This document shows positions 11,968-64,000 of a stretch of 64,000 nucleotides of DNA, piece by piece (position 1 is the stretch's first letter; every line of letters starts with the position of its first letter). The notes under the pieces were generated by a model that did not search any database, was not told the DNA's origin, and worked only from the letters and a program-made list of their open reading frames with translations. The translations under genes were made by a program, and so were the position numbers. The stretch comes from Malacoraja senta (lineage: Eukaryota). The stretch lies in contig CM075989.1 in assembly GCA_038087875.1 (NCBI GenBank), positions 7,750,001 through 7,814,000 on the forward strand, written 5' to 3'.

Positions 11968-14818
11968 GAACATAGAAAATAGGTGCAGGAGTAGGCCATT
12001 CGGCCCTTCGAGCCTGCATCGCCATTCGATATGATCATGGCTGATCATCCAACTCAGTATCCCAACCCTGCCTTCTCTCCATACCCCCTGATCCCTTTAG
12101 CCACATCTAACTCCCTCTTAAATATAGCCAATGAACTGGCCTCAACTACCTTCTGTGGCAGAGAATTCCACAGATTCACCACTCTCTGTGTAAAAAATGA
12201 TTTTCTCATCTCGGTCCTAAAAGGCTTCCCTCTTATCCTTAAACTGTGACCCCTAGTTCTGGACTTCCCCAACATCGGGAATAATCTTCCTGCATCTAGC
12301 CTGTCCAACCGCTTAAGAATTTTGTACGTTTCTAAAAGACCCCCCCTCAATCTTCTAAATTCTAGCGTGTACAAGCCGAGTCTATCCAGTCTTTCTTCAT
12401 ATGAAAGTCCTGCCATCCTAGGAATCAGTCTGGTGAACCTTCTCTGTACTCACTCTATGGCAAGAATGTCTTTCCTCAGATTAGGAGACCAAAACTGTAC
12501 GCAATACTCCAGGTGTGGTCTCACCAAGACCCTGTACAACTGCAGTAGAACCTCCCTGCTCCTATACTCAAATCCTTTTGCTATGAATGCTAACATACCA
12601 TTTGCTTTCTTCACTGCCTGCTGCACCTGCATGCCTACTTTCAATGGCTGATATCCAAAATCAATACCCTTTTCCTAATAGGCCACCATTCAGATAATAG
12701 TCTACTTTCCTGTTTTTGCCACCAAAGTGGATAACCTCACATTTATCCACATTATACTGCATCTGCCATGCATTTGCCCACTCACCCAACCTATCCAAGT
12801 CACCTTGTAGCCTCCTAGCATCCTCCTCACAGCTAACACTGCCCCCCAGCTTCGTGTCATCTGCAAACTTGCAGATGTTGCATTCAATTCCCTCATCCAG
12901 ATCATTAATATATATTGTAAATAGCTGGGGTCCCAGCACTGAGCCTTGCAGTACCCCACTCGTCACTGCCTGCCATTCTGAAAAGGACCCGTTTACTCCT
13001 ACTCTTTGCTTCCTGTCTGCCAGCCAGTTCTCTATCCACATCAATACTGAACCCCCAATACCGTGTGCTTTAAGTTTGCATACTAATCTCTTATGTGGGA
13101 CCTTGTCGAAAGCCTTCTGAAAGTCCAGATATAACACATCCACTGGTTCTCCCTTATCCACTCTACTAGTTACATCCTTGAAAAATTATATAAGATTTGT
13201 CAGACATGATTTACCTTTCATAAATCCATGCTGACTTTGTCCAATGAATTCACCACTTTCCAAATGTGCTGCTATCCCATCTTTAATAACTGACTCCAGA
13301 ATTTTCCCCACCACCGATGTTAGACTAACTGGTCTGTAATTCCCCGTTTTCTCTCTCCCTCCCTTTTTAAAAAGTGGGGTTACATTAGCTACCCTCCAGT
13401 CCTCAGGAGCTACTCCAGAATCTAAAGAGTTTTGAAAAATTATCACTAATGCACCCACTATTTCTGCGGCTACTTCCTTAAGTACTCTGGGATGCAACTT
13501 ATCTGGCCCTCGGGATTTATCGGCCTTTAATCCATTCAATTTATCTAACACCACTTCCCGGCTAACCTGGATTTCACTCAGTTCCTCCATCTCATTTAAC
13601 CCCCGGTCCCTTGCTATTTCCGGCAGATTATTTATGTCTTCCTTAGTGAAGACAGAACCAAAGTAGTTATTCAATTGGTCTGCCATGTCCTTGTTCCCCA
13701 TGATCAATTCGCCTGTCCTCCTCTGCTGGACTGAATTTCTCCCAGTCCTCTGGTAGGCTGCTTTTTCTGGCTAATTTGTACACTTCATCTTTTGTTTTGA
13801 TACTGTCCCTGATTTCCCTTGTTATCCACGGATGCACTACCTTCCCTGATTTATTCTTTTGCCAAACTGGGATGAACAATTGTTGTAGTTCATCCATGCA
13901 GTTTTTAAATGCCTTCCATTGCATAACCACCGTCAACCCTTTAAGAATCATTTGCCAGTCTATCTTGGCCAATTCATGTCTCATACCCTCAAAGTCACCT
14001 TTCTTTAAGTTCAGGACCCTTGTTTCTGAATTAACATTGTCACTCTCCATCCTAGTGAAGAACTCAACCATATTATGGTCACTCTTGCCCAAGGGGCCAC
14101 GCACAACAAGACTGCTAACTAACCCTTCCTCATTACTCAATACCCAGTCTAGAATAGCCTGCTCTCTCGTTGGTTCCTCTACATGTTGGTTTAGAAAACT
14201 ATCCCACATACATTCCAAGAAATCCTCTTCCTCAGCACCCCTGCCAATTTGATTCACCCAATCTATATGTAGATTGAAGTCACCCATTATAACTGTTTTA
14301 CCTTTGTTGCACGCATTTCTAATTTCCTGTTTGATGCCATCCTCAACGCCACTACTACTGTTAGGTGGCCTGTACACAACTCCCACTAGCGTTTTCTGCC
14401 CCTTAGTGTTTCGCAGCTCTACCCATATCGATTCCACATCCTCCAAGCTAATGTCCTTCCTTTCTATTGCGTTAATCTCCTCTCTAACCAGCAACGCTAC
14501 CCCGCCTCGTTTTCCTTTCTGTCTATCCCTCCTATTGAATATCCCTGGATGTTCAGCTCCCAGCCTTGGTCACCCTGGAGCCATGTCTCCATGATCCCAA
14601 CTATATCATATTCATTAATAACTATCTGCACATTCAACTCATCCACCTTATTACGAATGCTCCTTGCATTAAGATACAAAGCCTTCAGGCTTGTTTTTAC
14701 AGCACTCTTACCCCTTATACAATTACGTTGAAAAGTGGCCCTTTTTGATTTTTGCCCTGGATTTGTCTGCCTGCCACTTTTACTTTTCACCTTGCTACCT
14801 ATTGCTTCTACCCTCATT
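11968..14818 (-). mobile_element. CR1/HER1-like LINE covering most of ORF2 (APE endonuclease and RT), frameshifted
   Basis: ORF pieces LYLNARSIRNK, ETWL, GDFN, SDH, NYRPVSLTS, LDFQKAFDKV, QGSVLGP, KFADDTKL; CR1 tail. Confidence 0.95.
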
Positions 14819-26309: not shown

Positions 26310-26450
26310 TAGACACAAAATGCTGGAGTAACTCAGCGGGTCAGGCAGCATCTCTGGAGAGAAGGAATGGGTGACGTTTCGGGTCGAGACCCTTCTTCAG
26401 ACTGATGTCAGGGAGGGTGCGGGACAAAGATAGAATGTAGTCGGAGACAG
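26310..26450 (-). mobile_element. Penelope-like terminal repeat with an intact hammerhead-like core
   Basis: Minus strand CTGAAGA-A-GGGTCTCGACCC-GAAACGTC at 26400-26373. Confidence 0.7.
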
Positions 26451-32402: not shown

Positions 32403-34488
32403 GAGACCTTCAAATTATCTTTAATCGGACTTTGCTGGACTTTAACTTGCATTAAACATTCTACCCTTTATCCTGCATTTGTACAGTGGACAGCTTGAAT
32501 GTAATCATATATAGCCTTTTCACTGAATGGATAGCATGCAACAAAAAAAAGCTTTCCACTATACATCGGTACATGTGACAATAATAATAAACTAAATATT
32601 GGCCATAACATCCCAGTCCCACATACCTATCCATGCCCCAAGTTCAACCGCCTTACCCATCAGATCTCTTGCATTGAAATAAATAATTTAATCCAACACT
32701 CTTTCCTTGTTCCATGCTGTGCACCTGTCTGTCTTATCTGCTGAAGCTACCCTTAACTTCTCTATCAATTTTCAGCCTGATCTGCCTCACTACTGCTTTG
32801 GATCCCACTCCCCTGCCAATCTAGAGTAAACCCTCCCCAGGAGAAAAACTGTTTACCAAGATATACACTTAAATGTTTAAACATTTTACTTCTTATAAAG
32901 GAGCAGATTAGAAAAAATTGGAAGAGCTAACATGATCCAAGTGAACAAATTGTGCTATTTGCTCGAAAAGTTGTACCCAGAGATAGTATAAATTTTGGAA
33001 AACTAGGGGCATCTAGATTTACCCATTACTCTATCGGGTATTTCAACTCAACAAATAGTTCAGCTCGCATTCCAGTCACATTCACATGGCTACCTCAGTT
33101 TTGACTTGAAACAAATTTCAAAATACTGTTTCATTAGGTGAAAAGAAAATGGAAACCAAACAGTGACTGTATGTGCTTTGAAATATCAAATATAGTGCCT
33201 TAAATATACTGTCCCCACAATAGGTGAAACAATTGCATTTGTCTCCCATATAAAGCATTAATGCAATTTTTTCATGAATTAAAGGAAGATGGCTCTATTC
33301 TATCAACTACAGCTGAAGCTATTATCCAACACAATTGCAGGATCCCCTCAGGTAATTAGAAAATAATAAGCAGCATGTTGCCAATTACCTTCCTCCACAC
33401 ACGCTGTATTCCACCCTCCCCAGCAGCATTCAATTACTTCTGTCAGCAAGCACCAGCTGGCACTGCAGAGTTGATTAATCCCAGTCTCAAACATTCAGCC
33501 AGGGTTTGTAACAACTCTAATCTGTTACTGCTACCCAGGATTGCTTCTGGTGAAATCACACGAGCCTGAGAACCAATATCTTTGCTGGTAGATTTTTGGT
33601 TGCTGTAATAAGCAAATAACATTTACTGAGCTTAGTTACACAACAGATCTACCATCTAAAGCTGTTCAACTGCAGAGAAAGTTGCGAATCATTTGATAGC
33701 TCATGTGTAACACAGATTTTTATGGCAGGAGTAAAAGCGCAGCATACACCGATTCCCAGAAATCCCTGCAAAATGTACAATTATGTGCAAATTTAATAAT
33801 GGGTACATTTTGCACATGGCTATTGTCTGAATAAATATTAATTTTATTTTTTCTTAAATATTTCAGAGACATTCTGAACATTGCAAGAACAATCTTGAAT
33901 ATCAAGATGTCATTGGCCAGGGTAACTGAAAAATACATCTAACCATACAAGTCTACCATTCAACAAAAACAGAACTGAAGAGTCTTCAAGAATAACGTTT
34001 CCCATAATGTTACTGTATTGAACTTGAGGCTCAAATAAGCTTATGTAACTTAGACAAATATCACCAATTGAATCCAGCATACGATTCTACAATTTTCAGC
34101 AGATATACTGCAAGCAGCCGTGCATCATACAAGATTAGGCACAACTTGATCGCTATACTCAAAATTATGAATGATTTTGATAGGGCTAAATAAACTTCCA
34201 ATGGGGGATGTGACTGGAAAAAAGATTCCATACGAGCTGAACCACTGGCAGCATGTTTTTTATTCCATAGAAAATTGTGGGGATCTGGAATGCCCTACTT
34301 GAAAGATTCAAACAATTCAGCAGAACATTGGATAACAGGCAAGAATATTTCAGGGAAATATGACGACTGGTGCTTATTCTACAACAGTCCAAGCAGAAGC
34401 TGAATAGCTTCCCTTGTAATTATGATTCTATGATCATAATCTTATGATTCTATGATCAATCATTGATCTATTTTGAATTGAACATTTG

Positions 34489-45400: not shown

Positions 45401-48400
45401 CCAATGAGACTGTGCGTATTTTTAAAGCTAGAATCAATGTAACAAGTAAATTGTGTAAAATTCTGTTTTTATTATCACTGGAAAAAATTTCAAACTCAAG
45501 GATTTGAGGCAAGATTTAATTTCAACCATCCATAACATTAAATTGAGATCTTGAATGCCTTCAGGTGGATGCAAAAAGAGCAAATTTGTCATTTATGAAC
45601 TGATCAATATTTACCCACTAACTCGACTAGAACAGATAATTAGGCAAGATGTTATCGTGCTACCATACGAATGTGTGATCTACATTAACTAACCGCTACA
45701 ACATTGAACCATATTCCAAAAGCCATTTCCTGCTTCCACTTCCTCCTCTCTACAATCAGTGAAGGGTCCCAACGCAAAACATCACCTATCTATTTTCTCC
45801 AGAGATGACCCGCTGAGCTACTCCAGCATTGTCTGTCTTTCGAAATGTACAAGCTGCAGTGTGCTTTGTGATTTCCTGAAGGGGGAGTAAACGATACTGG
45901 ATAAATATGTCTCTCTTTCGATCTGCAGGTTCCTCTGTATCCTTTATTTCTAAACTTGGCAATTTAGTCTTTGAAATAAGAAAATTATTGTAATTTTTGC
46001 ATCAAAATTCAGTTAGGAGCAAACAATGGCTGAATAATTGCAATTTATTTTGTAGCTTGAACTGACATTTCAGTGTGCATGAATTCATGGTGTCATCTCA
46101 TAGAAACAAAGGTCCTTTACAACAGCAACAATGAGGGTGTATACTGTTGTTTACTCAACATCTGTATGGAGTTGCCACCTGCAAAAATCTGCATTTAAAA
46201 CATTAACAGATTATTTTCCAACTAATTGTTTAAGATTTTAACATATCTGATTGAAAATATTTTTTTTGAAAAGGGATTACTGTGCTGTCAAATGAACCAT
46301 TTTCAGATGAGATATGAAAGCAAGGTCCTGTATACTCTATCAAGAGAAATAAATGGGAACAGGCCACTCAGTGCAAAGAAATCATGGTTGATCTTCCATG
46401 CTATCCCTAAATGCATTGATTCACCTAGTATCCAGAAATCAATCTCCATTTGGAGTGTAACCAACAATAGCTTACCGCAACTTATAGTGATCAACTTATA
46501 GCTTAACAAATGGAATGATTCGCCAACTTCTGAAGAATTTCTCAACATTTCAGTCTTCATTCTTCCAAAACCAGAGCGACCATATCTGTACAGTGCTCCA
46601 AATGTGGCCATACCAGTCACCTGTACAGCCAGACACAATATCCCTATGTCTGTACTCAATACCCTAGCCAAAGGCAATCATGTTTAACCCTATCACCACT
46701 TTCAAACTACGTAACTGCACCACTAGATCTCTTTTCTATATAACTGCTAGAGCTCTACCATTTACAGTGCAAGTCCTACCCTAGATTGACTTCCCAAAAT
46801 GAAACACCTCGGATTTGTCTGAATTAAACTCCATCTGCCATTCCTCAGCCCACTGGCCAAGTTGTAATGGTCTTTATGGAATGCATAATAGAGGGGAAAA
46901 TAAGTTACGTCCAGTAAGGGAACATTGTTGAAATGGTGAAAATTAGAGATAATCCATTTAACATGGAGGATGGTGTGTTAAAAGCTAATCACAAGGGAAT
47001 TCCTGACCTTTACTTTAACACGGACTGCACTTAAAAGCATTTTCACTGGATGCAAAGATACTATAGAAAAATAAGATACATTCTCAACTGACCTAGATTA
47101 TGGGGACGTGACAAATGTTTCAGTACCATTTAAAAAAAATTGCATGGCGGCCACAGCTAACATTTATAGTACATCACCAATAGCCCCTGTAGAGGATTAC
47201 TTGCTAAGTAATGTCAGGTGGCATTTAGGAATCAACCACATTGCTGCAGTTCTATATAGGCTAGAACAGAAAGATAGATTTCATCTCCTTCACACTATCG
47301 GTGAAGCAGATGGGGCTTTACAACCATCCAGTAATTTGGTCGTTGTTACCGAGGGCTGGTTATGTTCTAAAAGTTCCAGGTTAACTGAATTTAAATTTCA
47401 CATGTTACGGTAGAATCTGAATTTATTTCCATGGATTACTTTTAATTTAACTACTGTGACTTTTAAATTAAACAATTAGACAGCTGCATGGAATTGAACA
47501 GGAAGTCAAAAAAAAATTCCAACTTCGAAGAGGCTCAAATTATATTTTTGGACATTGATTTTACAATGCCACATTTAAATGGGATGCTTAAGTTCAGTTC
47601 GAGTTTATTAGTATGGGCATTTGGACAAGAAAATATAGTTGGAATGAAGTAGATAAGTAGTTGAGAATGAAAGAGCCATGTTTTATATCAACCAATCGGC
47701 ATGTTAGATAGATCCATTGGGGTATGGTAATTGCAGGTCAAAAGAGATAAGCACGTGTACACCTTGATTCTAATCTTATAAACATTATTGTCCAAGAAAG
47801 ATGCGCTACTGACAAAGATGTAACAGCAGGATACTTTATGGTTAATTATGAGATTACTTGATGTTTGGTATTATATATAAAACAGCAATGGTAGTATTAA
47901 AGTAACAGATCTTTGTTTTTTTGCTCCAGATTCCTTCATCTGCAGTCTCTTGTCTCTTCAGATCTCAAGAACGGCTTACTTTGAAAAGGGGAAGACAAGG
48001 ATGGATAAAAGCCACAAGATGCCAAACTAAAAATGCCAGTGGAAACTAATCAATAAAAGTTCATCATGTCCATTTACCCTTGAAACAGTTCCATGGACAG
48101 AGATGGGATAAAACTTGCATTCCCATGCTACATGAAATGTCAAATGACTCAAGAACCAGATTAATTAAATTTGAGCCACTACCCAATATGCAGTGTGGAT
48201 ACATGACTCTTTCATCCTCAAATACATAGCCACTTATCGCCAAATACATTTCTTGCCCATTCTAATAAACTCTGGAAACTGAACTTAAGCAACATATTTA
48301 AATGAGCCTCTTCATACAGTGAGCTATTAGTCACCCAACCCGATAAATAATTTCTAAAGCCTTAATGATAACGGCCATCAAGACCAAAGAGAATTATTTC

Positions 48401-49056
48401 AATTTATTAGGAAACACGTCCAGAATGTAGAAGATCCAGACTTATTGGCCACTAGCTGTCAAGAATTTATTAGTAAACACAAAAAGCTGGAGTAACTCAA
48501 CAGGACAGGTAGCATATCTGGAGAGAAGAAATGGGTGATGTTTATGGTCGAGACCCGTCTTCAGACGTTGGATTCCATGCAAGATTAGGATGGCCTCAGG
48601 ATTCTTGATTCTGCTGATTTAAATGAGCATTATAGGATTGTGAAGCAAAGGAGAATTTGATAAACTCATTGTTTAATTGTTTTGGCTTTGCTTAAAATAA
48701 GTTTGAACTGATTTTTAATCTTTCAGACATTCAAAGGCATTTAAAATGTATTTTGCCTTTTACAGCCTATAATACAATGTGCAGTGTTTCCTCAGTGTGC
48801 CATTGGAGAGACGGATTTGATACTCAAATTCTCTATGGATGGACTGTGCAATACAGCACCAAGTGAAATATCAATAGTTTAATTGAAACACAAGCACAAA
48901 GAAAGGAATGTTCAGCCCCCTGTCCCTCAAGCCTGATGGTATTCAATATCATGGTTGATCTGCCTCTTGCCGTTTCCCATAATGTCCCCAAATGATCTAC
49001 TTCTGGAATACAATATCCTAGAGATTTGCCACCTTTTGCAAAAAAGTTCCCACGTA

Positions 49057-49387
49057 CAAGTCCACCGCCGAGTAGCTGGCACCTCCTTTAAGCCGGTCGT
49101 ATTTATACCCTGCAGCCAGGGTTCTGGAACTCCGGCCTGGTCGGAGCCAGCAGAACCTTCCCATAGCTGATTGGCGGGTCAAATTCCCCCTGCCACTGGG
49201 GCTCTGGAACTCCGGCCCAGCCGATCATTTCCCATAACTGACTTCCGAGGCTGACTTTGCGAGCAGTAATCTTGGTGGCTTTGGTGGACCATCGGACTCC
49301 GAGGCCTTGACCTCTGCCGATTCGGCAAAACAGATAATCCAGAAAGGCTCTGGTACCAAGGGTGCCAGAAAATCATTGGTGGACCTG
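49057..49387. mobile_element. TA-flanked Tc1/mariner-pogo type MITE
   Basis: TA|CAAGTCCACC...CTGGCACC and GGTGCCAG...GGTGGACCTG|TA imperfect TIRs; internal direct repeat CTGGAACTCCGGCC. Confidence 0.7.
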
Positions 49388-50014
49388 TACCTCAGTTGTA
49401 AATATTCACACCCTTATCTTGTAACTACGTACCCTAGTTCGATATTCTCCCCACCAGTTGAAATTGAGTCATAAAGTTATAGGGCACGGAAACATGTCTT
49501 TGCCAACATCTCAACTAACCCTCAGGATTTTCCATCCCATTCGTCTAAACTCAAAAGAGCTAGCTTCTTGAGCCACATAATAGGACCATCTCCGGTGCTA
49601 GTATAATCCTCTCTTAAATAAGAACAAACTGTATATAATACACAAAGATGGGAGCTCAAACCTATTATCGTAACAAAATTTCCTCATTGCTAAACTCCAG
49701 CCTCCTTGCCATTAAGCCAATTGATACATTTTGGGAGCACCAATTAGTGAAGGACAATGGATGGTAGGGTGCTAGGGAGCAAAGATCTTATAGCGAGCAA
49801 GATGGTCCACTCCTGCGAAAGACAATGGACTGACGTGTAGTACGCACTGAGCGTAACTTCCGTCATTTCAGTAACCCCGACCTGACTTCAGTTATGCCTC
49901 TCGCAGCGTTGCGGGGGAACAGTTTATGTGTTTTTAAATGTTTTTTTATAATTTACTTTTTAAACGGCACATACCTTGTACAGACACCAAAGGCTGCAGT
50001 AAATCAGCGGATCA

Positions 50015-50362
<348 letters not shown>

Positions 50363-50448
50363 CTATGATCGTTGTTTTCGTCCGTCTGCCGCGCGCTCTT
50401 GGTGCCGGCGCTTCTCCCCATAGACTCCGCCAAACACACATACACACC

Positions 50449-50571
50449 ATGTCTGGCAGATCGGAGCGGGCCGAGACTAGGAGCAGCAAAGATCGCTATA
50501 AGATCTTTGAGGAGCAGGGCGAAGGATGACATCAAACGGGTCATGGCAGCTATCGGAAAAGTATGGGATTG
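50449..50571 (+). pseudogene. BCL7A: Captured BCL7A-like coding exon 1 with its GTAAG donor, disrupted by a 31-bp insertion
   Basis: Reads MSGRSERAETRS[insert][19 protein letters not shown]; 92 nt without the insert; KRVMAA fits BCL7A better than BCL7B/C. Confidence 0.85.
50487..50509. mobile_element. 23-bp TIR-only remnant (footprint) of the same transposon family
   Basis: CAAAGATC+GCTATAAGATCTTTG flanked by 8-bp direct repeat AGGAGCAG (50479-50486, 50510-50517). Confidence 0.85.
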
Positions 50572-53500
50572 GTAAGGGGGAAATTAAAAAAATCCCAGAA
50601 GGAAATAGATGTTTAACAAAAAGGGAGGGGGGGGGGCGGCGCCGGCGATCACTCCATGTCCGTGTCGGAGGGAGGAGGATGGTTTGAGTTCCTCTTTCCT
50701 CCGACTCAGTCTGAAGACAGGTCTCGACATGAAATGTCACCTATTCCTTTTGTCCAGAAATGCCGCCCGACCCGCTGCATTTTGTGTCTCTGTTCGCCTT
50801 TAATCGCTCAGCCTGATATAGCAGAATCTCCCTGAACTAGCTTGACGCCATGACAGAAGCCGGTTGCGGAAATGGCGCTGAAGATTACCCATGACCCTAT
50901 TACGTTTTTTTAGCGGAGTGGACCATCTTGCTCACTATAAGATCTTTGCTAGGGAGTATTGAGAAACAAAGGGAACTTGGCATACGTCCAAACATCCTTG
51001 AAGGTGGCTGTACAGGTACATAACGTGATAAAGGGTACATATGGGATGGTGGTCAGGGCAATGAACACAATAGCAGGGACCTTTGCTTGTGAAACATTGA
51101 TGAGAGGAAATTCATCAGGATGTTGCATTTCAGTTGAGGGGAAACTGGAGTTTTAGTTATGAGAACTGGGTCTGTTTACCATGGAGCAGAGGAAGCTTTG
51201 ATTGGGGTATGTAAAATGAGTTTCCTCAGACCTGGAGAAAGGATTGAAAAATTGAGAGGATTTCAGGGAGACTTTCTTCCCTTGCTTCCATCATTCCATC
51301 AGACAGTCATAGCATTTTAAAAAGTGGCCAGATACGTAGTTGAATCAACCAAACAGGAAACACGATATCATTTGTTTTTCCAACTACTTCCAACTTGTGA
51401 TTCATGCACAATATCTAGATCCCTCCAACCGATTTGTAATCTCACAACATTTCAACAAACTGATGTTTAAGAACTGTAGGTTAGTATGCAGATAGCCTCT
51501 CGTTATAACAGATCATTGGGGGTGGGAGAAGAATGGTGTCCCCTATAATCGAGTAAGTGGAGTAAATATATAGACAGCCAATAATCATACACTAAACAAG
51601 ACAGGCGAACAGAGACCGAGCCAAAATTCACTCCAACCACCCAGCGGTCACTCGTGAAACGGCAAACATTGTCCATGTTCCCAATAAAAAAGATTTAATT
51701 TGCTACAATAGAGATCTGTTATAAAGAGGTATGTAATAACTTGGGTAGTCTGTATCTATTTTACGTTGAAGCTCATTAAGTCAATTTATGAGGCAAAGTT
51801 AAAACTCTCAATTGGTTATTTAAAATAGTGATATCTGTTTAATACATCAAATCCAAGTAAACACGAGACTGAATTTTCCATAATTCTGGGATTTTAGTAC
51901 AATTAAAATAATTCTAATTTCAAATTTACTAATAAATCAATACTGCAAAAGATTATTTATTCGTCAGATTTTTATTATTGTACTAGGGCAAAATCAGTCA
52001 CTATCAATTTTGGAAAATGGATTACTTCTGCTTTCTAACATTGTTACACCACCGAGTATTTCCATTTTCTTTGTCTCAAAGCACAACAGCAATTCAGCTG
52101 CACCAGTGAGAATGCCAGCCTCACATTGAAACATTACTTTTTTTAATTGGTGTATTATATGGAGGGTACATTTTATGAGTAGGAGCTGCTCACAGTGACC
52201 CATGCCCTTTAGCACTAATTTCAGACTGCCGAGCTTAATTTACTTAAATATAGGCAAATCCCATGTTATAGCCATTAAGGTTCTGGAAAATCTCCACGCC
52301 AGAATTCTCAAATCACTAATTAAAAATCTGAGATATGGAATAAAGTTCTCATGTAATTTGTGAATAGGTCAATGCAAGTTATATTTTTCAACTCCCTTTA
52401 TGCATATGGAGATGCGGATTTGCGTTATGGAAAAATCACAAAACGGACAGCTTTCTAGGAATGCAACCATCTCCACCAACACTAACATGGGGTCAACTGT
52501 ACTCTGGCTTTCTGCATTGAACTTTGTGAAAACACTTGTTCAATGAGCAGTTTGATGTAAAGTTTAACACGTTTATTTTGAGCAAGAATTTTCTGGCTTA
52601 AGAATAGAAACGGTACAAAATGGATTGACACTCGTTAATACTAAAATGTAACATACAATGTTATTTTTTTTCACCTCATTAAAATGCCTGTCCTTAACTC
52701 TAATAAGGAGGAAAGCAAAGAAACTAGATAACATTTCAACTTGAATACAAAACTACAAGTATAGTATTTGTTCAAAGACTAAATTAGGCATTGATAACCT
52801 CAATTATTCGTTACACATATGAAAGAATCCTTGAGCTGGGTAACCATGCGTAGCTCAGAGCCCATCTTAAAATAATTCACACTACATTTTTACGTCTGAA
52901 GATAAATATGGAAGACTAACATAGTATCATTAGAAATATACCCACTCTTTCTTTGTTGATACACACTTACAAAATGCTTTCAATCATCCGGTTATTTCTA
53001 GTCTGGCACAATCCTCAATTCCTTTTATGATGTTATTATCCGAATCCCTTTATATCACATTGGTCCTTCACGATCAGCTTATGCTTGTACTGCTCAATCT
53101 TATTAAGGAGTTGAAGGGGGTGTAGTTCAACCAACCCACTTCTCATTCTATTTCTGGATCTTGTGCCCTCAACATGAAACCAAGCATCAGAGCACAACTA
53201 TGCATTAATTCTTGAAAAATCCAATCCATAATAACATAGTGAGAACATCAAGCACAGTGGAAGCTACAAAGAGCAATAATATTTATCAAATAATCTTTAA
53301 GATTTACGCACCAGGTAAAGTACATTAAAAAGAGTACAATGTGTTGTTATTGCCCTGACATCCAGTGTAGAGATTAATAATTATAATGCTAATTCCAGTC
53401 AGGCTCTTTGACATGCCTATTCTTTCTTCCCCATCCAGAGACATGTAGACTTTTGATCAAGTCATTTTTCCGAAAAGGCTTGAGGCAATTTTCAAACTGT

Positions 53501-56380: not shown

Positions 56381-56553
56381 GCTGAAGAAGGATCTCGACT
56401 CGAATCTTGCATGGAATCCAACGTCTGAAGAATGGTCTCAACCAGAAACATCACCCATTCCTTCTCTCCAGAGATGCTGCCTGTCCTGCTGAGTTACTCC
56501 AGCCATTTGTGTCTATCTTCTGTTTAAACCAGCATCTACAGTTCCTTCTTACA
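56381..56553 (+). mobile_element. Penelope-like terminal repeat with a tandemly duplicated CTGAAGAA head
   Basis: Two CTGAAGAA..TCTC units; flanked by direct repeat TATCTCTGGCTGA (~56372-56384, ~56556-56568). Confidence 0.7.
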
Positions 56554-59500: not shown

Positions 59501-62279
59501 ATTTCAACCCACTATATCAAGAACTGAACTTATATTCCATTGATTAGCAATCCATCATTAAGATATCAGTAGGAATGTGTAGGAAGGAACTGCAGACGCT
59601 AGTTTAAACCGAAGATAGACACAAATTGCTGGAGTAACTCAGCAGGACAGGCAGCATCTCTGGAGAGAGGGAATGGGTGACGTTAAGAAATTAGTGCCCA
59701 ATATACAGCACTGTTTAGTTTTGGGGTCCGGTACTCAAAAAGATTAGATACGAAGGGAGAAATGCATCGACTTACAATAAAGTCAAGGATTAAATGGTTA
59801 AAATCAAATCAGGAATAAACAGGAAACACCTTTTCACAATAGTGGAAATCTGGAATTTTCTCTCATAAAGCAGCAGCTCCCAAATTAGACAGAATAATAA
59901 AGTTATTCAATCCCTTCATAAAGAGATATGGATCAAAGATAGGAAGATAAAGCTAAAGGAAAAATTGGCTTCAATCAGCTGAATGGTGGAACAGATCAAT
60001 GGAACTAGATTGTCCATGCCGCTTCCAGGTTACACTATGATGCCTCAACATTTTGGGATAAATGTAACCTGGAACACCCTAGCTATGTAATTTAAAGAGG
60101 AAAACAGCCCACCACATTGGCATCCGAATATAAAAATGAAAATTTTATTTGCCAATAGCAAGAAGAGTGAATAAACTCAAAGCAGTAATATAAAAACAGA
60201 TTTGAGGTTTCAACATATTCCCAAGTTCAGAAACCAGCTGAACACTCCTGGGCATCACAGACGTTTCATGTTTTTGCCAAACTCCAAGTCATCTGTTATT
60301 TAATAAAAATAAGTAACCCTGTGATAAGAAAAAAATCAACTGAAATCAATGACCACACTGATTAAAGAACAAGCTGGATCAGAAGGAATTATCACTGGCG
60401 AGTGCGCAATACCACACTTGGTTCAATCATCATTTTCATTTCAATTTGATAAATGAGGATAAAAATGTATTAGTGGAATTAGTAGTTTAAGGAAGCCAAA
60501 TATTCGCAAACGGAGAGTAAAGCCCCAAAAGATGTTTTAAAAAATGCATTTACAACTATTCTGTTAAATCAAGACAAAACCCCTACTGAATACATTATAG
60601 TCACTAAAATCTAAATAAAATAAGACAAAGAATATCATTTTAGATATAGAACATATTATTAACACTATGAATGCAGAAGTGGATATTCTTCACTGATACC
60701 AAAACAAAGCAGTTAAAAGGAGTGATTAGAAAGGTCAATAGATCGGAAATGTTGAGGTTGTGGGTCAAATGAGACGATCTTAGATCGGTCTGGATGAGTT
60801 GGGCTGAAGGGTATTTCCATGCTGTATGACCCATGACCCACTTCCCTTCGGGAGATCAATAACAAGGGTGGCATAAAATTATGGCGATTGATAGAAAGAT
60901 AAATAAATTAGTTTCCTCCACCATAGAATGAGATTCAGGAAGCTACTGCCTGGAAAATATGGAACCTGAAACTCTCATCAACCTATAAAGATACAAACCA
61001 AGAGCTCAGAAGTGGAATTCTCCCCAAAAGATCCCTTTTTCGCTTGCAGACAGACTGCAATGCTGCCTTCCTATGTTATAATTTATTGAATAATTGCAAA
61101 TGGTTTTGAGCACTCTTTACCAATACTTTTGAAATCTGCAAATCTGCAAATAATACATAATTTAAATATGTCAAAACGTGTTGTGAACATCTACAAAGAA
61201 AATTTCCAGAAAACTATCAACGTACTACAGATTCTTGGCGAAGATGGAGGAAAAAATAGTTTCCATTCCATTTTTGGAAAATTAGACTCTGCATTAAAAA
61301 CTACTTGTGCTGTCCTGGTATATCAAAGTTTTGAGTATTTTAATTCCATGTACTACAAATTACAATTATCAGCTGTGTGCAACATTCCATGGCTTTGATT
61401 TATCCTACAATCTATATCCAAATGTTATAATTAATTTGGATTAGCATGATTTTTTGAGTGAGAAACATAATTGCAGATGACGATTTAATACTGAACACAT
61501 TTCGCAGCAAAAATATGTCAAGTTGATGGCTTGAAACCAAGTCTACAGGTCGGTCTTTTGTATCCCCTTCTGATACTGAAGATGATATAAAATATCTCAA
61601 CATTAACATAATTATCTGAAGTCTCATAAATGGTATAACCTGGACACAAATATATTTAATGAAGAGTTAACACCATAATTTCTCATATTCCCAGTCGCTG
61701 CACTCATAGGTAATGGGGAAAGGAAATAAGTCACTTGGAATATCCTCAGACCACCTAAAAAAATGCTTTACAAAAGCAGATCACATAGGTAGTAGTTAGG
61801 GGTGGATCATATAGGTAGTAGTTGGAGGTGGCAAGTGATACATCCAAGGGAATGAGGAAGGAAAATAAACAAGTCAATTGTGTTTCAAATGTTAGATTTA
61901 TTTTCTAAAATTATCCCTGTATATTTATAACCACCTTTTAGTGTATGCATCAGACAAAGATCAAGAACAATTATCCAGCAATATACCTTGTATTTGTTTT
62001 TTGGACTTTAATTATGTGAAGCATACGTGAAATTTCTAGTACATTGTAATGCAATTTCAGACACAGAAAGGACTGGTTTAAATGCAGCAGGACCCCACCT
62101 GTCTATTTCCTATTACCCAATTCAAGCCGTCAACTCGGCATTTCATGAAACGTCTTTGGTCGTCAGTGTATGTTACACGGATGTAAAAAAAAATCCTTTC
62201 CTAATCTTAGACCCCACCTAGTTTCAACAAGGCAAAAACAGGGCAAGGCACGACTCCTTCTTACATGAAGATGGAGATA

Positions 62280-63220
62280 TTCCCATACAACAGTCCCCGA
62301 GTCCCGATCGCGATGGCTCAGTCGGGAGACAGAGACTGGCCAAGCCCGTGGGCGACGCCACGGTCACAGCCCCCCGTTGTGATGGGGCTTCAACAGCGGC
62401 CACCCAGCCAGGCAGCGTCCGGCTCGACCAACCGCTGGCCGTCAGACCGGTCCCGGGGCCCCAAATCGGGAATAAAGGGAAGGAAGGAAGCTGGGCGGCG
62501 GCAAGCGCCATGTTTGCCGAGTGGGCCCAGGGCGGGGGATCCATTCATCAGGGAGGGAGGGCGGGCGGGCGGCATCCCATCCACACACAGCCGATTCCTA
62601 CCCCCACAACCCCAGTTGTACCCCACACCGAGACAGACCCCCAATGGCGGCGGCCTCCCCTCGCCACCCCCACACGCGGCCTGCCCCTGCCTCTCCGCCC
62701 GCACGAACTCACTCACTCACCCGGCGGGCTGCCGCTCACATTGACCGCTCTCGGCCCGGGGCTCGGCGCCAACCGTCGCGCTTCGGGGCCGACTGCGCTG
62801 TGGCTTTCGTTCCTCCTCGGCGTCGGCTGTGAGCACTGCGGTGCAGGTGGGGGTGAAGTGAAGGCTGCGCGGTGCGTGCGGCTGGGTCTGTCTGCCCGGC
62901 TCGATGTGGCGGCGGACTAGGCGCGGCGGGCGGCGGCCATTACACGGAGACAGTGGCTCCGGCGGGATGGGCGCGGTGCGGCACTCGCCCCTGCTCGCAG
63001 CTCGGGAAACCCCACGCTCTCCCGCCTCGAGCCCCCGCGCGCACGTACACTCGCGCGCACCGCGTTCGGCTCAGGACCCGTGCGTGCACGCGCGCGCGCG
63101 TCCGTCGGCCCTGACGCACTCGCACAGCGGAGGGTGGTGGCGGGTCACGTGTACCCGGGTGGCAACAACAGCGGCCCCTTGTGCTCTGGAGGTATTGGCT
63201 CAGAGCAAGCGCTCGTGCCC
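62280..63220. promoter_or_regulatory. CpG-island promoter of GNB1
   Basis: High GC and CpG content; GTCACGTG E-box (CACGTG 63146-63151); CGCG/GCGC runs 63035-63100; YY1-like CGCCATGTT 62506-62514 and ATGGCGGC ~62644. Confidence 0.85.
62721..62970 (-). other. GNB1: GNB1 non-coding first exon (TSS approximate)
   Basis: GC-rich segment in the CpG island ending at a strong donor CGG|GTGAGT (62720). Confidence 0.7.
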
Positions 63221-64000
63221 CACCTAGACTCCCACCCATTTCTCCCCCTGCTTTCAACCCCCCACATTCTTCCCTCCACATTCTTTGTTCCTACCATCAA
63301 CCACCCCCCTTTACCTGCCACACTTTGTCCTGCCTCTCTCCCTCCCAGATTTATCTCCCCCTTCCCCCATAATCAGTCTAATGAAGGGTTTCTACCTGAA
63401 ACATCACCTATCCATGTTCTCCAGAGATGCTGCATGTCACTTGTGCTGTCACTTTCATAGAGCTTTAGACACTTGGACCTCAAGATTGCTCTGTCTCATC
63501 ATTAACTATATACTTCCCCTGATATTTGACTTTCCAAAATGTAACACTGTACACTTGCTTGGATTAAACTCCAGGTCAGGGGACATTCCTAGCAGCAGCC
63601 TCTGCCGGCTGATCAACCTCGCAGCCTTTCTGGCATACCACTGGGCCCACTAACCTGCAGATCCCAGCCCTCCTGCTACACATACGAGCGGTGAATAACC
63701 ACAACATGGGTCCCTGAATTTCCCTTACCCTGCAGACACCCACCACTCTGGATGAAAACGTTTCCCCTAATCACATCTCCGTACCTCTAACAAATAGTTT
63801 AAAACTATGTTTACTAAGTTCTTTTGCCTCTCTCAAAAGGAAACAAGGTCTTCCTGTTTACCTAGGCCCTTCAATTTTGTAAAATTATAGTCATAGAGTT
63901 GTACAGCACGGAAACAGATCCTTTGACCCAACTTGTCCATGCTGACCAAAATACCCTATACACTAGTCCCACCTGCCTGCGTCTGGGCCATATCCATATA

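What the first reader, a model, noticed from the sequence alone, without database searches (positions are those of the whole stretch)
50479..50517. TIR-only 23-bp footprint of the same family inside its own cargo
Seen: AGGAGCAG-[CAAAGATC GCTATAAGATCTTTG]-AGGAGCAG, i.e. about 8 nt of one TIR joined to about 15 nt of the other with an intact 8-bp TSD. The inverted BCL7A copy lacks it and shows the empty site. Known: P transposase makes 17-nt staggered cuts, so end-joining leaves up to ~17 nt of each TIR, whereas hAT excision hairpins the flanks and leaves no TIR. Inference: a family member inserted here and excised by P-type chemistry, which is independent support for once-active P elements in this lineage.
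Basis: partly seen in the sequence, partly recalled or inferred. Interest (0 to 1): 0.8.

Follow-up and report, generated by a model that had tools for sequence, protein, structure and literature searches.

The report
Transposon excision scar in shark-like genome
A 23-base remnant of a DNA transposon's two ends, flanked by an intact 8-base target duplication, sits inside a copied BCL7 first exon in a cartilaginous-fish genome. It is most simply read as the scar of a P-element-type excision, although this family's transposase type could not be shown.

Summary
At 50479-50517 the sequence reads AGGAGCAG | CAAAGATCGCTATAAGATCTTTG | AGGAGCAG. The 23-mer consists of the first 8 nt and the last 17 nt of the 34-bp terminal inverted repeat (TIR) of the surrounding 1169-bp element (49780-50948, target-site duplication CTAGGGAG). 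The two parts overlap by 2 nt (TC). The inverted paralogous BCL7 exon-1 arm carries the 8-mer once and lacks the 31 bp, so it shows a clean empty site. Shuffled sequence gives no such structure.

Best reading (about 0.6): a family member inserted here, was excised with a long staggered cut, and the ends were joined. One side keeps 15-17 nt and the other 6-8 nt, never more than 17. That fits the 17-nt P-element stagger. It does not fit hAT, MULE or Transib (flank hairpins), Tc1/mariner (2-3 nt) or piggyBac (none).

Three weaknesses remain:
- There is only one footprint.
- The superfamily is not shown. No transposase lies in the window, and CAAAG with an 8-bp TSD also fits hAT.
- An extreme internal deletion cannot be excluded.

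The genome-wide test for a cap on retained length could not be run. Earlier notes of this scan report similar palindromic inserts and THAP-bearing P-like elements elsewhere in this genome. I did not check them. This is a known kind of scar in a new lineage, of moderate interest.

The parts
50479..50486 (+). left copy of the 8-bp target-site duplication, AGGAGCAG
50487..50509 (.). 23-bp TIR-only remnant CAAAGATCGCTATAAGATCTTTG: the first 6-8 nt of the family TIR joined to its last 15-17 nt through a 2-nt TC overlap. The orientation of the lost element cannot be told, because both TIRs are identical over their first 17 nt.
   Evidence: (I13, D9)
50510..50517 (+). right copy of the 8-bp target-site duplication, AGGAGCAG
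50100..50107 (-). empty site in the inverted paralogous BCL7 exon-1 arm: a single AGGAGCCG with no insert
50449..50570 (+). right-arm copy of BCL7 exon 1 (ATG at 50449). The 31 added bases come after nt 38 of the coding sequence and cause a frameshift.
   Evidence: the uninterrupted left arm (50054-50137, minus strand) matches Pfam BCL_N
49780..50948 (+). enclosing 1169-bp non-autonomous element of the same family. It has 34-bp TIRs at 49780-49813 and 50915-50948 (33 of 34 complementary) and the 8-bp TSD CTAGGGAG at 49772-49779 and 50949-50956.
   Evidence: (I7)

Best explanation
This is an excision footprint, a fossil with no function of its own. A member of the CAAAGATC-TIR family inserted into the BCL7 exon-1 copy carried by another member, and that insertion duplicated AGGAGCAG. 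The inserted element was later cut out by a transposase that cleaves the non-transferred strand well inside the TIR, as P-element transposase does at 17 nt. Each flank was thus left with a 3' overhang made of the outer 17 nt of the TIR. End joining kept one overhang whole. Its last two bases (GA-3') paired with TC at positions 7-8 of the other overhang, the 9-nt flap was trimmed and the gap was filled. The result is 6 + 17 nt, which can equally be read as 8 + 15 nt, between two intact TSD copies. Shown here: the anatomy, the family identity, the empty site and the retained lengths. Inferred: the staggered-cut chemistry, the repair route and P-superfamily membership.
For: The structure is exact and does not arise by chance. 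The prefix of 8 nt and suffix of 17 nt match the TIR with a 2-nt overlap, so neither side retains more than 17 nt and one side retains at least 15 nt. The paralogous arm shows a clean 31-bp gap and carries the 8-mer once. Both TSD copies share the A that distinguishes them from the paralog's AGGAGCCG, so they are a true duplication of the local sequence. The family is multi-copy in this and related species. Contigs of the same species break at both TIRs, and dozens of distinct contigs cover the element's ends. P transposase cuts the 5' strand 17 nt inside the TIR, and the donor break can be repaired by NHEJ. [quoted passage not shown] From my own knowledge, Beall & Rio 1997 and Staveley et al. 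1995 reported Drosophila P footprints that keep up to about 17-18 nt of each end. Unchecked notes of this scan report THAP-bearing P-like elements with 8-bp TSDs in this genome.
Against: There is only one footprint, so a cap at 17 nt cannot be demonstrated. The superfamily is unproven: no transposase lies in the window, the terminal CAAAG fits the hAT YARNG rule, and the host TSD CTAGGGAG fits the hAT nTnnnnAn pattern. The overhang contains the 8-nt palindrome AAGATCTT, so microhomology joining would be expected to favour the 12-bp product CAAAGATCTTTG rather than the one seen. No run could be shown to hold a full element or an empty site at this position. For zebrafish THAP9, the only vertebrate P transposase assayed, the reported excision products had larger flank deletions rather than TIR-retaining footprints.
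Confidence: 0.6

Rival explanations
1. Extreme internal deletion. A family member inserted here and stayed. Later almost all of it was lost, by replication slippage, microhomology-mediated deletion or abortive gap repair, between points 6-8 nt from one end and 15-17 nt from the other. This needs no particular cleavage chemistry and would also work for a hAT-type family.
For: The junction has a 2-nt microhomology (TC), as deletion junctions often do. The superfamily is not established, and the hAT-like features CAAAG and an 8-bp TSD are present. Internally deleted derivatives are common for cut-and-paste elements, as with the internally deleted Pdre copies in zebrafish.
Against: Both breakpoints would have to fall within 17 nt of their own end. 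For random breakpoints in an element of about 340-1200 bp, that is roughly 1% to 0.02% of deletions. Only one other family copy lies in this 64-kb window, so the chance of meeting such a rare derivative here is small.
Confidence: 0.25
2. A mobile TIR-only micro-element. The 23-bp palindrome-like unit was itself inserted by the family's transposase and made the 8-bp TSD directly.
For: The TSD is intact and the unit carries both terminal sequences. An unchecked note of this scan (s1-195540) proposes TIR-only micro-transposons elsewhere in the genome.
Against: The 23-mer occurs once in the window, even with 3 mismatches. One side of the unit keeps only 6-8 nt of TIR, far less than the 34-bp TIR plus subterminal repeats shared by the family's ends. 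From my own knowledge, known P and hAT transposases need internal binding sites.
Confidence: 0.05
3. Templated insertion during repair of an unrelated break. Polymerase-theta-type repair copied 17 nt from the nearby host TIR, 440-700 bp away, into a break in the BCL7 arm.
For: The 17-nt suffix is identical to the reverse complement of the host's left TIR at 49780-49796 (I13).
Against: This does not explain an exact 8-bp duplication of the target. Nor does it explain why both edges of the insert coincide with the very first base of the TIR.
Confidence: 0.03

Closest known systems
Drosophila P-element excision footprints (17-nt staggered donor cleavage followed by NHEJ)
   Same: The TSD is 8 bp and both copies are kept. 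Terminal TIR bases from both ends remain, no more than 17 nt per side. The junction uses a short microhomology. The site lies in the 5' end of a gene-like sequence and inside another copy of the family, which recalls P's liking for promoters and for local or nested insertion (my own knowledge).
   Different: The host is a cartilaginous fish. The TIR sequence is unrelated (34 bp, starting CAAAGATC). No THAP/P transposase has been linked to these TIRs, and only one footprint was seen.
Zebrafish Pdre elements and zfTHAP9 (vertebrate P-like transposons)
   Same: They are vertebrate elements with TIRs and 8-bp TSDs, and they have internally deleted non-autonomous copies.
   Different: Pdre2 has 13-bp TIRs (CATACCTGTCAAC) with no similarity to this family. 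The reported zfTHAP9 excision products showed larger flank deletions, and no TIR-retaining footprints were described.
hAT elements (Ac, hobo, Tol2) and their footprints
   Same: The TSD is 8 bp, the TIR starts with YARNG (CAAAG), and the host TSD fits nTnnnnAn.
   Different: hAT excision hairpins the flanking DNA, so footprints are small indels of the TSD without TIR bases. Here at least 15 nt of TIR remain.

Membership tests
Transposon excision footprint (generic) | Both copies of the target-site duplication are kept, with only terminal element bases between them | tested here: met
   The TSD is 8/8 identical, and the 23-nt insert consists entirely of TIR prefix (8) and suffix (17) with a 2-nt overlap.
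Transposon excision footprint (generic) | A related sequence shows the unoccupied site with a single copy of the target | tested here: met
   The inverted BCL7 arm has one AGGAGCCG and a clean 31-bp gap. This is a paralogous site, not an orthologous one.
P superfamily | 8-bp target-site duplication | tested here: met
   The host element has CTAGGGAG and the remnant has AGGAGCAG. The feature is not specific, since hAT has it too.
P superfamily | Donor cleavage staggered by 17 nt, so footprints keep up to 17 nt of each TIR | tested here: met
   The remnant retains 6-8 and 15-17 nt, never more than 17. This is one example only, so the cap itself is not demonstrated.
P superfamily | Autonomous copies with the same TIRs encode a THAP-domain P/THAP9-type transposase | not testable with these tools
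   The window holds no transposase ORF and no other family copy. The rest of the genome is not readable here. The TIR is absent from metagenome contigs. Scan notes about THAP elements are unchecked and not linked to this TIR.
hAT superfamily | 8-bp TSD and TIR beginning YARNG | tested here: met
   The TIR begins CAAAG and the TSDs are 8 bp.
hAT superfamily | Target consensus nTnnnnAn | tested here: inconclusive
   CTAGGGAG fits, while AGGAGCAG fits only at the A. Two sites are too few.
hAT superfamily | Excision through flank hairpins, leaving footprints without TIR bases | tested here: not met
   At least 15 nt of TIR are retained on one side and at least 6 nt on the other.
Mobile micro-element (TIR-only MITE) | Several near-identical copies at different sites, each with its own TSD | tested here: not met
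   Only one copy occurs in the 64-kb window, even allowing 3 mismatches. The genome-wide count is not testable here.

The most novel reading that the evidence does not exclude
Natural footprints in a cartilaginous fish record that the unusually long (about 17-nt) staggered donor cut, so far mapped biochemically only for the Drosophila P transposase, is conserved in vertebrate P/THAP9-type transposons. They would also show that such elements were germline-active and targeted promoter and first-exon sequence even when that sequence was a copy carried inside another element.
Probability: 0.45. Interest if true: 0.55.

Novelty: new member of a known kind. Interest (0 to 1): 0.4.

Why it matters
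If the reading holds, a plain genome sequence records the cleavage geometry of an extinct or silent vertebrate transposase. That would show that P-type chemistry operated in the germline of cartilaginous fishes. It would also make a simple genome-wide test possible: the retained TIR lengths should cap at 17 nt. This bears on how THAP9-type transposases, which are domesticated in humans, cut DNA. The locus itself has no evident function. The scar only adds a frameshift to an already non-functional BCL7 exon copy.

Tried and rejected
- **Cross-species state of the site.** Contigs of four runs were laid on 48400-52000. They showed that X16 is the same species (contigs with 0 differences), that the family is multi-copy, and that the host element is present at the orthologous site of a relative whose flanks are about 92% identical. 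No listed piece spans 50479-50517, so the state of the footprint in other species is unknown.
- **Runs holding the footprint junction.** A search with 50460-50536 had only 3 sampled words, and no holder was listed. This is uninformative.
- **Other family copies.** The TIR pattern gave 0 hits in metagenome contigs. A look-up by sequence in the scan's notes was blank.
- **Transposase in the window.** ORFs of at least 150 aa gave only LINE reverse transcriptase and endonuclease matches. Translating the element's two ends showed no THAP-like C2CH pattern.
- **More footprints in the window.** The strict scan gave one further hit, at 34426, which is a 22-bp tandem duplication. The relaxed scan (TSD 7/8) gave 4 hits against 0-2 in shuffles, so there is no real excess.
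- **P-transposase seed.** No P-transposase sequence could be obtained from the tools to find elasmobranch homologues and read their TIRs.
- **Literature.** No paper in the library describing P-type footprints or P elements in cartilaginous fishes turned up.
- **Chance, tandem duplication and templated insertion** were rejected, because the 8-bp TSD is exact and both insert edges coincide with the TIR tips.

Full report
**What is there**

The 39 bp lie inside a 1169-bp non-autonomous DNA transposon at 49780-50948:
- Its 34-bp terminal inverted repeats are CAAAGATCTTATAGCGAGCAAGATGGTCCACTCC at 49780-49813 and the reverse complement, with one mismatch, at 50915-50948.
- Its own 8-bp target-site duplication is CTAGGGAG, at 49772-49779 and 50949-50956 (I7, 8).

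The interior of this element is a large fold-back. It holds two inverted copies of a BCL7-family first exon with upstream sequence, at roughly 50055-50260 (minus strand) and 50350-50562 (plus strand), bordered by fragments of the window's abundant SINE. The uninterrupted left copy (50054-50137, minus strand) matches Pfam BCL_N at E 1e-10.

**Is it more than chance?**

- The 23-mer occurs once in the window, even allowing 3 mismatches, and 0 are expected from shuffles.
- The pattern CAAAGATC-N(0-30)-GATCTTTG also occurs once, with 0 expected.
- A family-blind scan looked for any exact 8-bp direct repeat around an 8-60-bp insert with inverted ends of at least 6 nt. It found two sites, against none in 20 shuffles. 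The second site, at 34426, is a 22-bp tandem duplication and not a transposon trace.
- Relaxing the criteria gave no real excess: 4 hits against 0-2 in shuffles.

This is therefore the only such structure in the window.

**Anatomy of the remnant**

The first 8 nt of the insert equal the first 8 nt of the TIR, and its last 17 nt equal the last 17 nt of the TIR. The two parts overlap by 2 nt (TC), so 8 + 17 - 2 = 23 (also I13 and D9). One side therefore certainly keeps 15 nt and possibly 17 nt. The other side keeps 6 to 8 nt. Neither exceeds 17 nt.

The suffix matches the left-TIR version over 17/17 nt, but it matches the host's right TIR only up to 14 nt. The donor thus carried the family's usual sequence at that position.

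Both TIRs are identical over their first 17 nt, so the orientation of the lost element cannot be told.

**Empty site**

Aligning the two BCL7 arms (A1) shows one clean 31-bp gap (23 + 8) in the inverted arm. That arm reads GAGACC-AGGAGCCG-GGCGAAGG, with the 8-mer present once (CGGCTCCT at 50100-50107 on the + strand).

The uninterrupted arm is the one that encodes the conserved BCL7 N-terminus. The 31 bp are therefore an insertion into the right arm, after nt 38 of its coding sequence, and they cause a frameshift. Both TSD copies share the A that differs from the paralog's C, as expected if the local sequence was duplicated at insertion.

The arms are about 90% identical outside indels, while the 39-bp structure carries no mismatch to the TIR or between the TSDs. 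The event is therefore probably younger than the inverted duplication. This dating is an inference.

**Context from public runs**

- Run X16 gives contigs with 0 differences on the flanks, so it is the same species.
- Those contigs stop at 49809 and start at 50940, inside the TIRs. Dozens of distinct contigs cover the element's ends; for example, 46-63 contigs carry C instead of T at 50900. The family is therefore multi-copy in this species and in three related ones.
- A relative whose flanks are about 92% identical has contigs that run from unique flank into both TIRs (records 2 and 7). The host element was therefore already in place before those species split.
- No listed piece spans the footprint. 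A word search restricted to the junction had only 3 sampled words and listed no holder. Whether relatives carry a full element, the scar or an empty site is unknown.

**How it most likely arose**

P-element transposase cuts the 3' strand at the element tip and the 5' strand 17 nt inside the TIR. The donor break is then repaired by homologous recombination or NHEJ. An NHEJ footprint consists of the overhang sequence between the two TSD copies. Other superfamilies behave differently:
- hAT, MULE and Transib hairpin the flanking DNA and leave small TSD indels without TIR bases.
- Tc1/mariner leaves 2-3 nt.
- piggyBac leaves none.

With this TIR, each donor flank would carry the 3' overhang CAAAGATCTTATAGCGA. 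The observed product follows in three steps: the terminal GA-3' of one intact overhang pairs with TC at positions 7-8 of the other, the 9-nt flap is trimmed, and the gap is filled. That gives 17 + 6 nt with a 2-nt microhomology. The steps from cleavage onward are inferred and not shown.

From my own knowledge, Beall & Rio 1997 and Staveley et al. 1995 reported Drosophila footprints that retain up to about 17-18 nt per end. P elements are also known to favour 5' gene regions and to insert near or into other P elements. That would suit a site in a captured first exon inside a sister element.

**What weakens this reading**

- There is only one example, so a cap at 17 nt is not demonstrated.
- The superfamily is not established. 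The window holds no DNA transposase; its only large ORFs with a Pfam match are LINE reverse transcriptase and endonuclease. The two ends of the element show no THAP-like coding remnant. The terminal CAAAG fits the hAT YARNG rule, and the host TSD fits nTnnnnAn.
- The overhang contains the 8-nt palindrome AAGATCTT. Microhomology joining should favour the 12-bp scar CAAAGATCTTTG, so the observed product would be a classical NHEJ outcome.
- For zebrafish THAP9, excision products with larger flank deletions were reported, not TIR-retaining scars.

Notes from this scan mention THAP-bearing P-like elements and other 12-46-bp palindromic inserts with 8-bp TSDs elsewhere in this genome. They raise the prior for P-type activity, but they are unchecked AI notes and are not linked to this TIR. 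An insert of 46 bp, if real and of one family, would exceed 2 x 17.

**Rivals**

- **Extreme internal deletion of an inserted copy (0.25).** It would give the same picture under any chemistry, but both breakpoints must fall within 17 nt of their ends.
- **Self-mobile 23-bp unit (0.05).** This is unlikely, since the unit occurs once here and keeps only 6-8 nt of one TIR.
- **Templated repair insertion from the nearby TIR (0.03).** It explains neither the exact TSD nor the fact that both edges coincide with the TIR tips.

**Comparison with what is known**

The structure works like a Drosophila P-element excision footprint. Membership of the family in the P superfamily is open:
- 8-bp TSD: met, but not specific.
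- Retention of no more than 17 nt: met, once.
- THAP/P transposase with these TIRs: not testable here.

hAT membership fails on the footprint type, but it fits on the TIR tip and the TSD length. The zebrafish Pdre2 TIR is unrelated in sequence.

**Verdict**

The feature is real and correctly described. It is best read as a P-type excision scar (0.6). It is a new example of a known kind of trace in a lineage where I found no published description. Interest is moderate (0.4). Its value lies mainly in the genome-wide test it suggests.

Noticed in passing
window 34420-34462: A 22-bp tandem duplication (ttatgattctatgatca...) mimics an 8-bp TSD around a 14-bp palindromic insert. It is a false positive for footprint scans.
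   Followed up: yes
window 49982-50055 and 50703-50777 (also 50262-50339): The inverted duplication inside the host element extends beyond the BCL7 exon copies to inverted fragments of the window's abundant SINE (copies at 26311-26413, 48477-48566, 56423-56514 and others). The left arm lacks about 140 bp that the right arm keeps (50563-50702).
   Followed up: partly
window 49772-50956: The host element is present at the orthologous site in a related species whose flanks are about 92% identical (records 2 and 7), so its insertion predates that split. The host copy differs from most family contigs at 50806, 50837 and 50900.
   Followed up: partly
window 49860-49900 and 50830-50870: Subterminal inverted repeats lie about 80-125 nt from both ends of the host element and carry promoter-like motifs (ACTTCCG, GCCATTTCC). 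They may be transposase-binding sites or a promoter remnant.
   Followed up: no
window 12661-14494, minus strand: A degraded LINE shows endonuclease and reverse-transcriptase ORFs (Pfam Exo_endo_phos_2, RVT_1) in a stretch of strongly negative GC skew.
   Followed up: partly
window 50100-50107 versus 50479-50486 and 50510-50517: The target 8-mer differs between the arms by C/A. This is a synonymous CGG/AGG arginine codon change in the BCL7 reading frame.
   Followed up: no
window 62001-64000: GC content jumps to 0.57, against about 0.38 elsewhere, which suggests a CpG island or promoter at the window's end.
   Followed up: no
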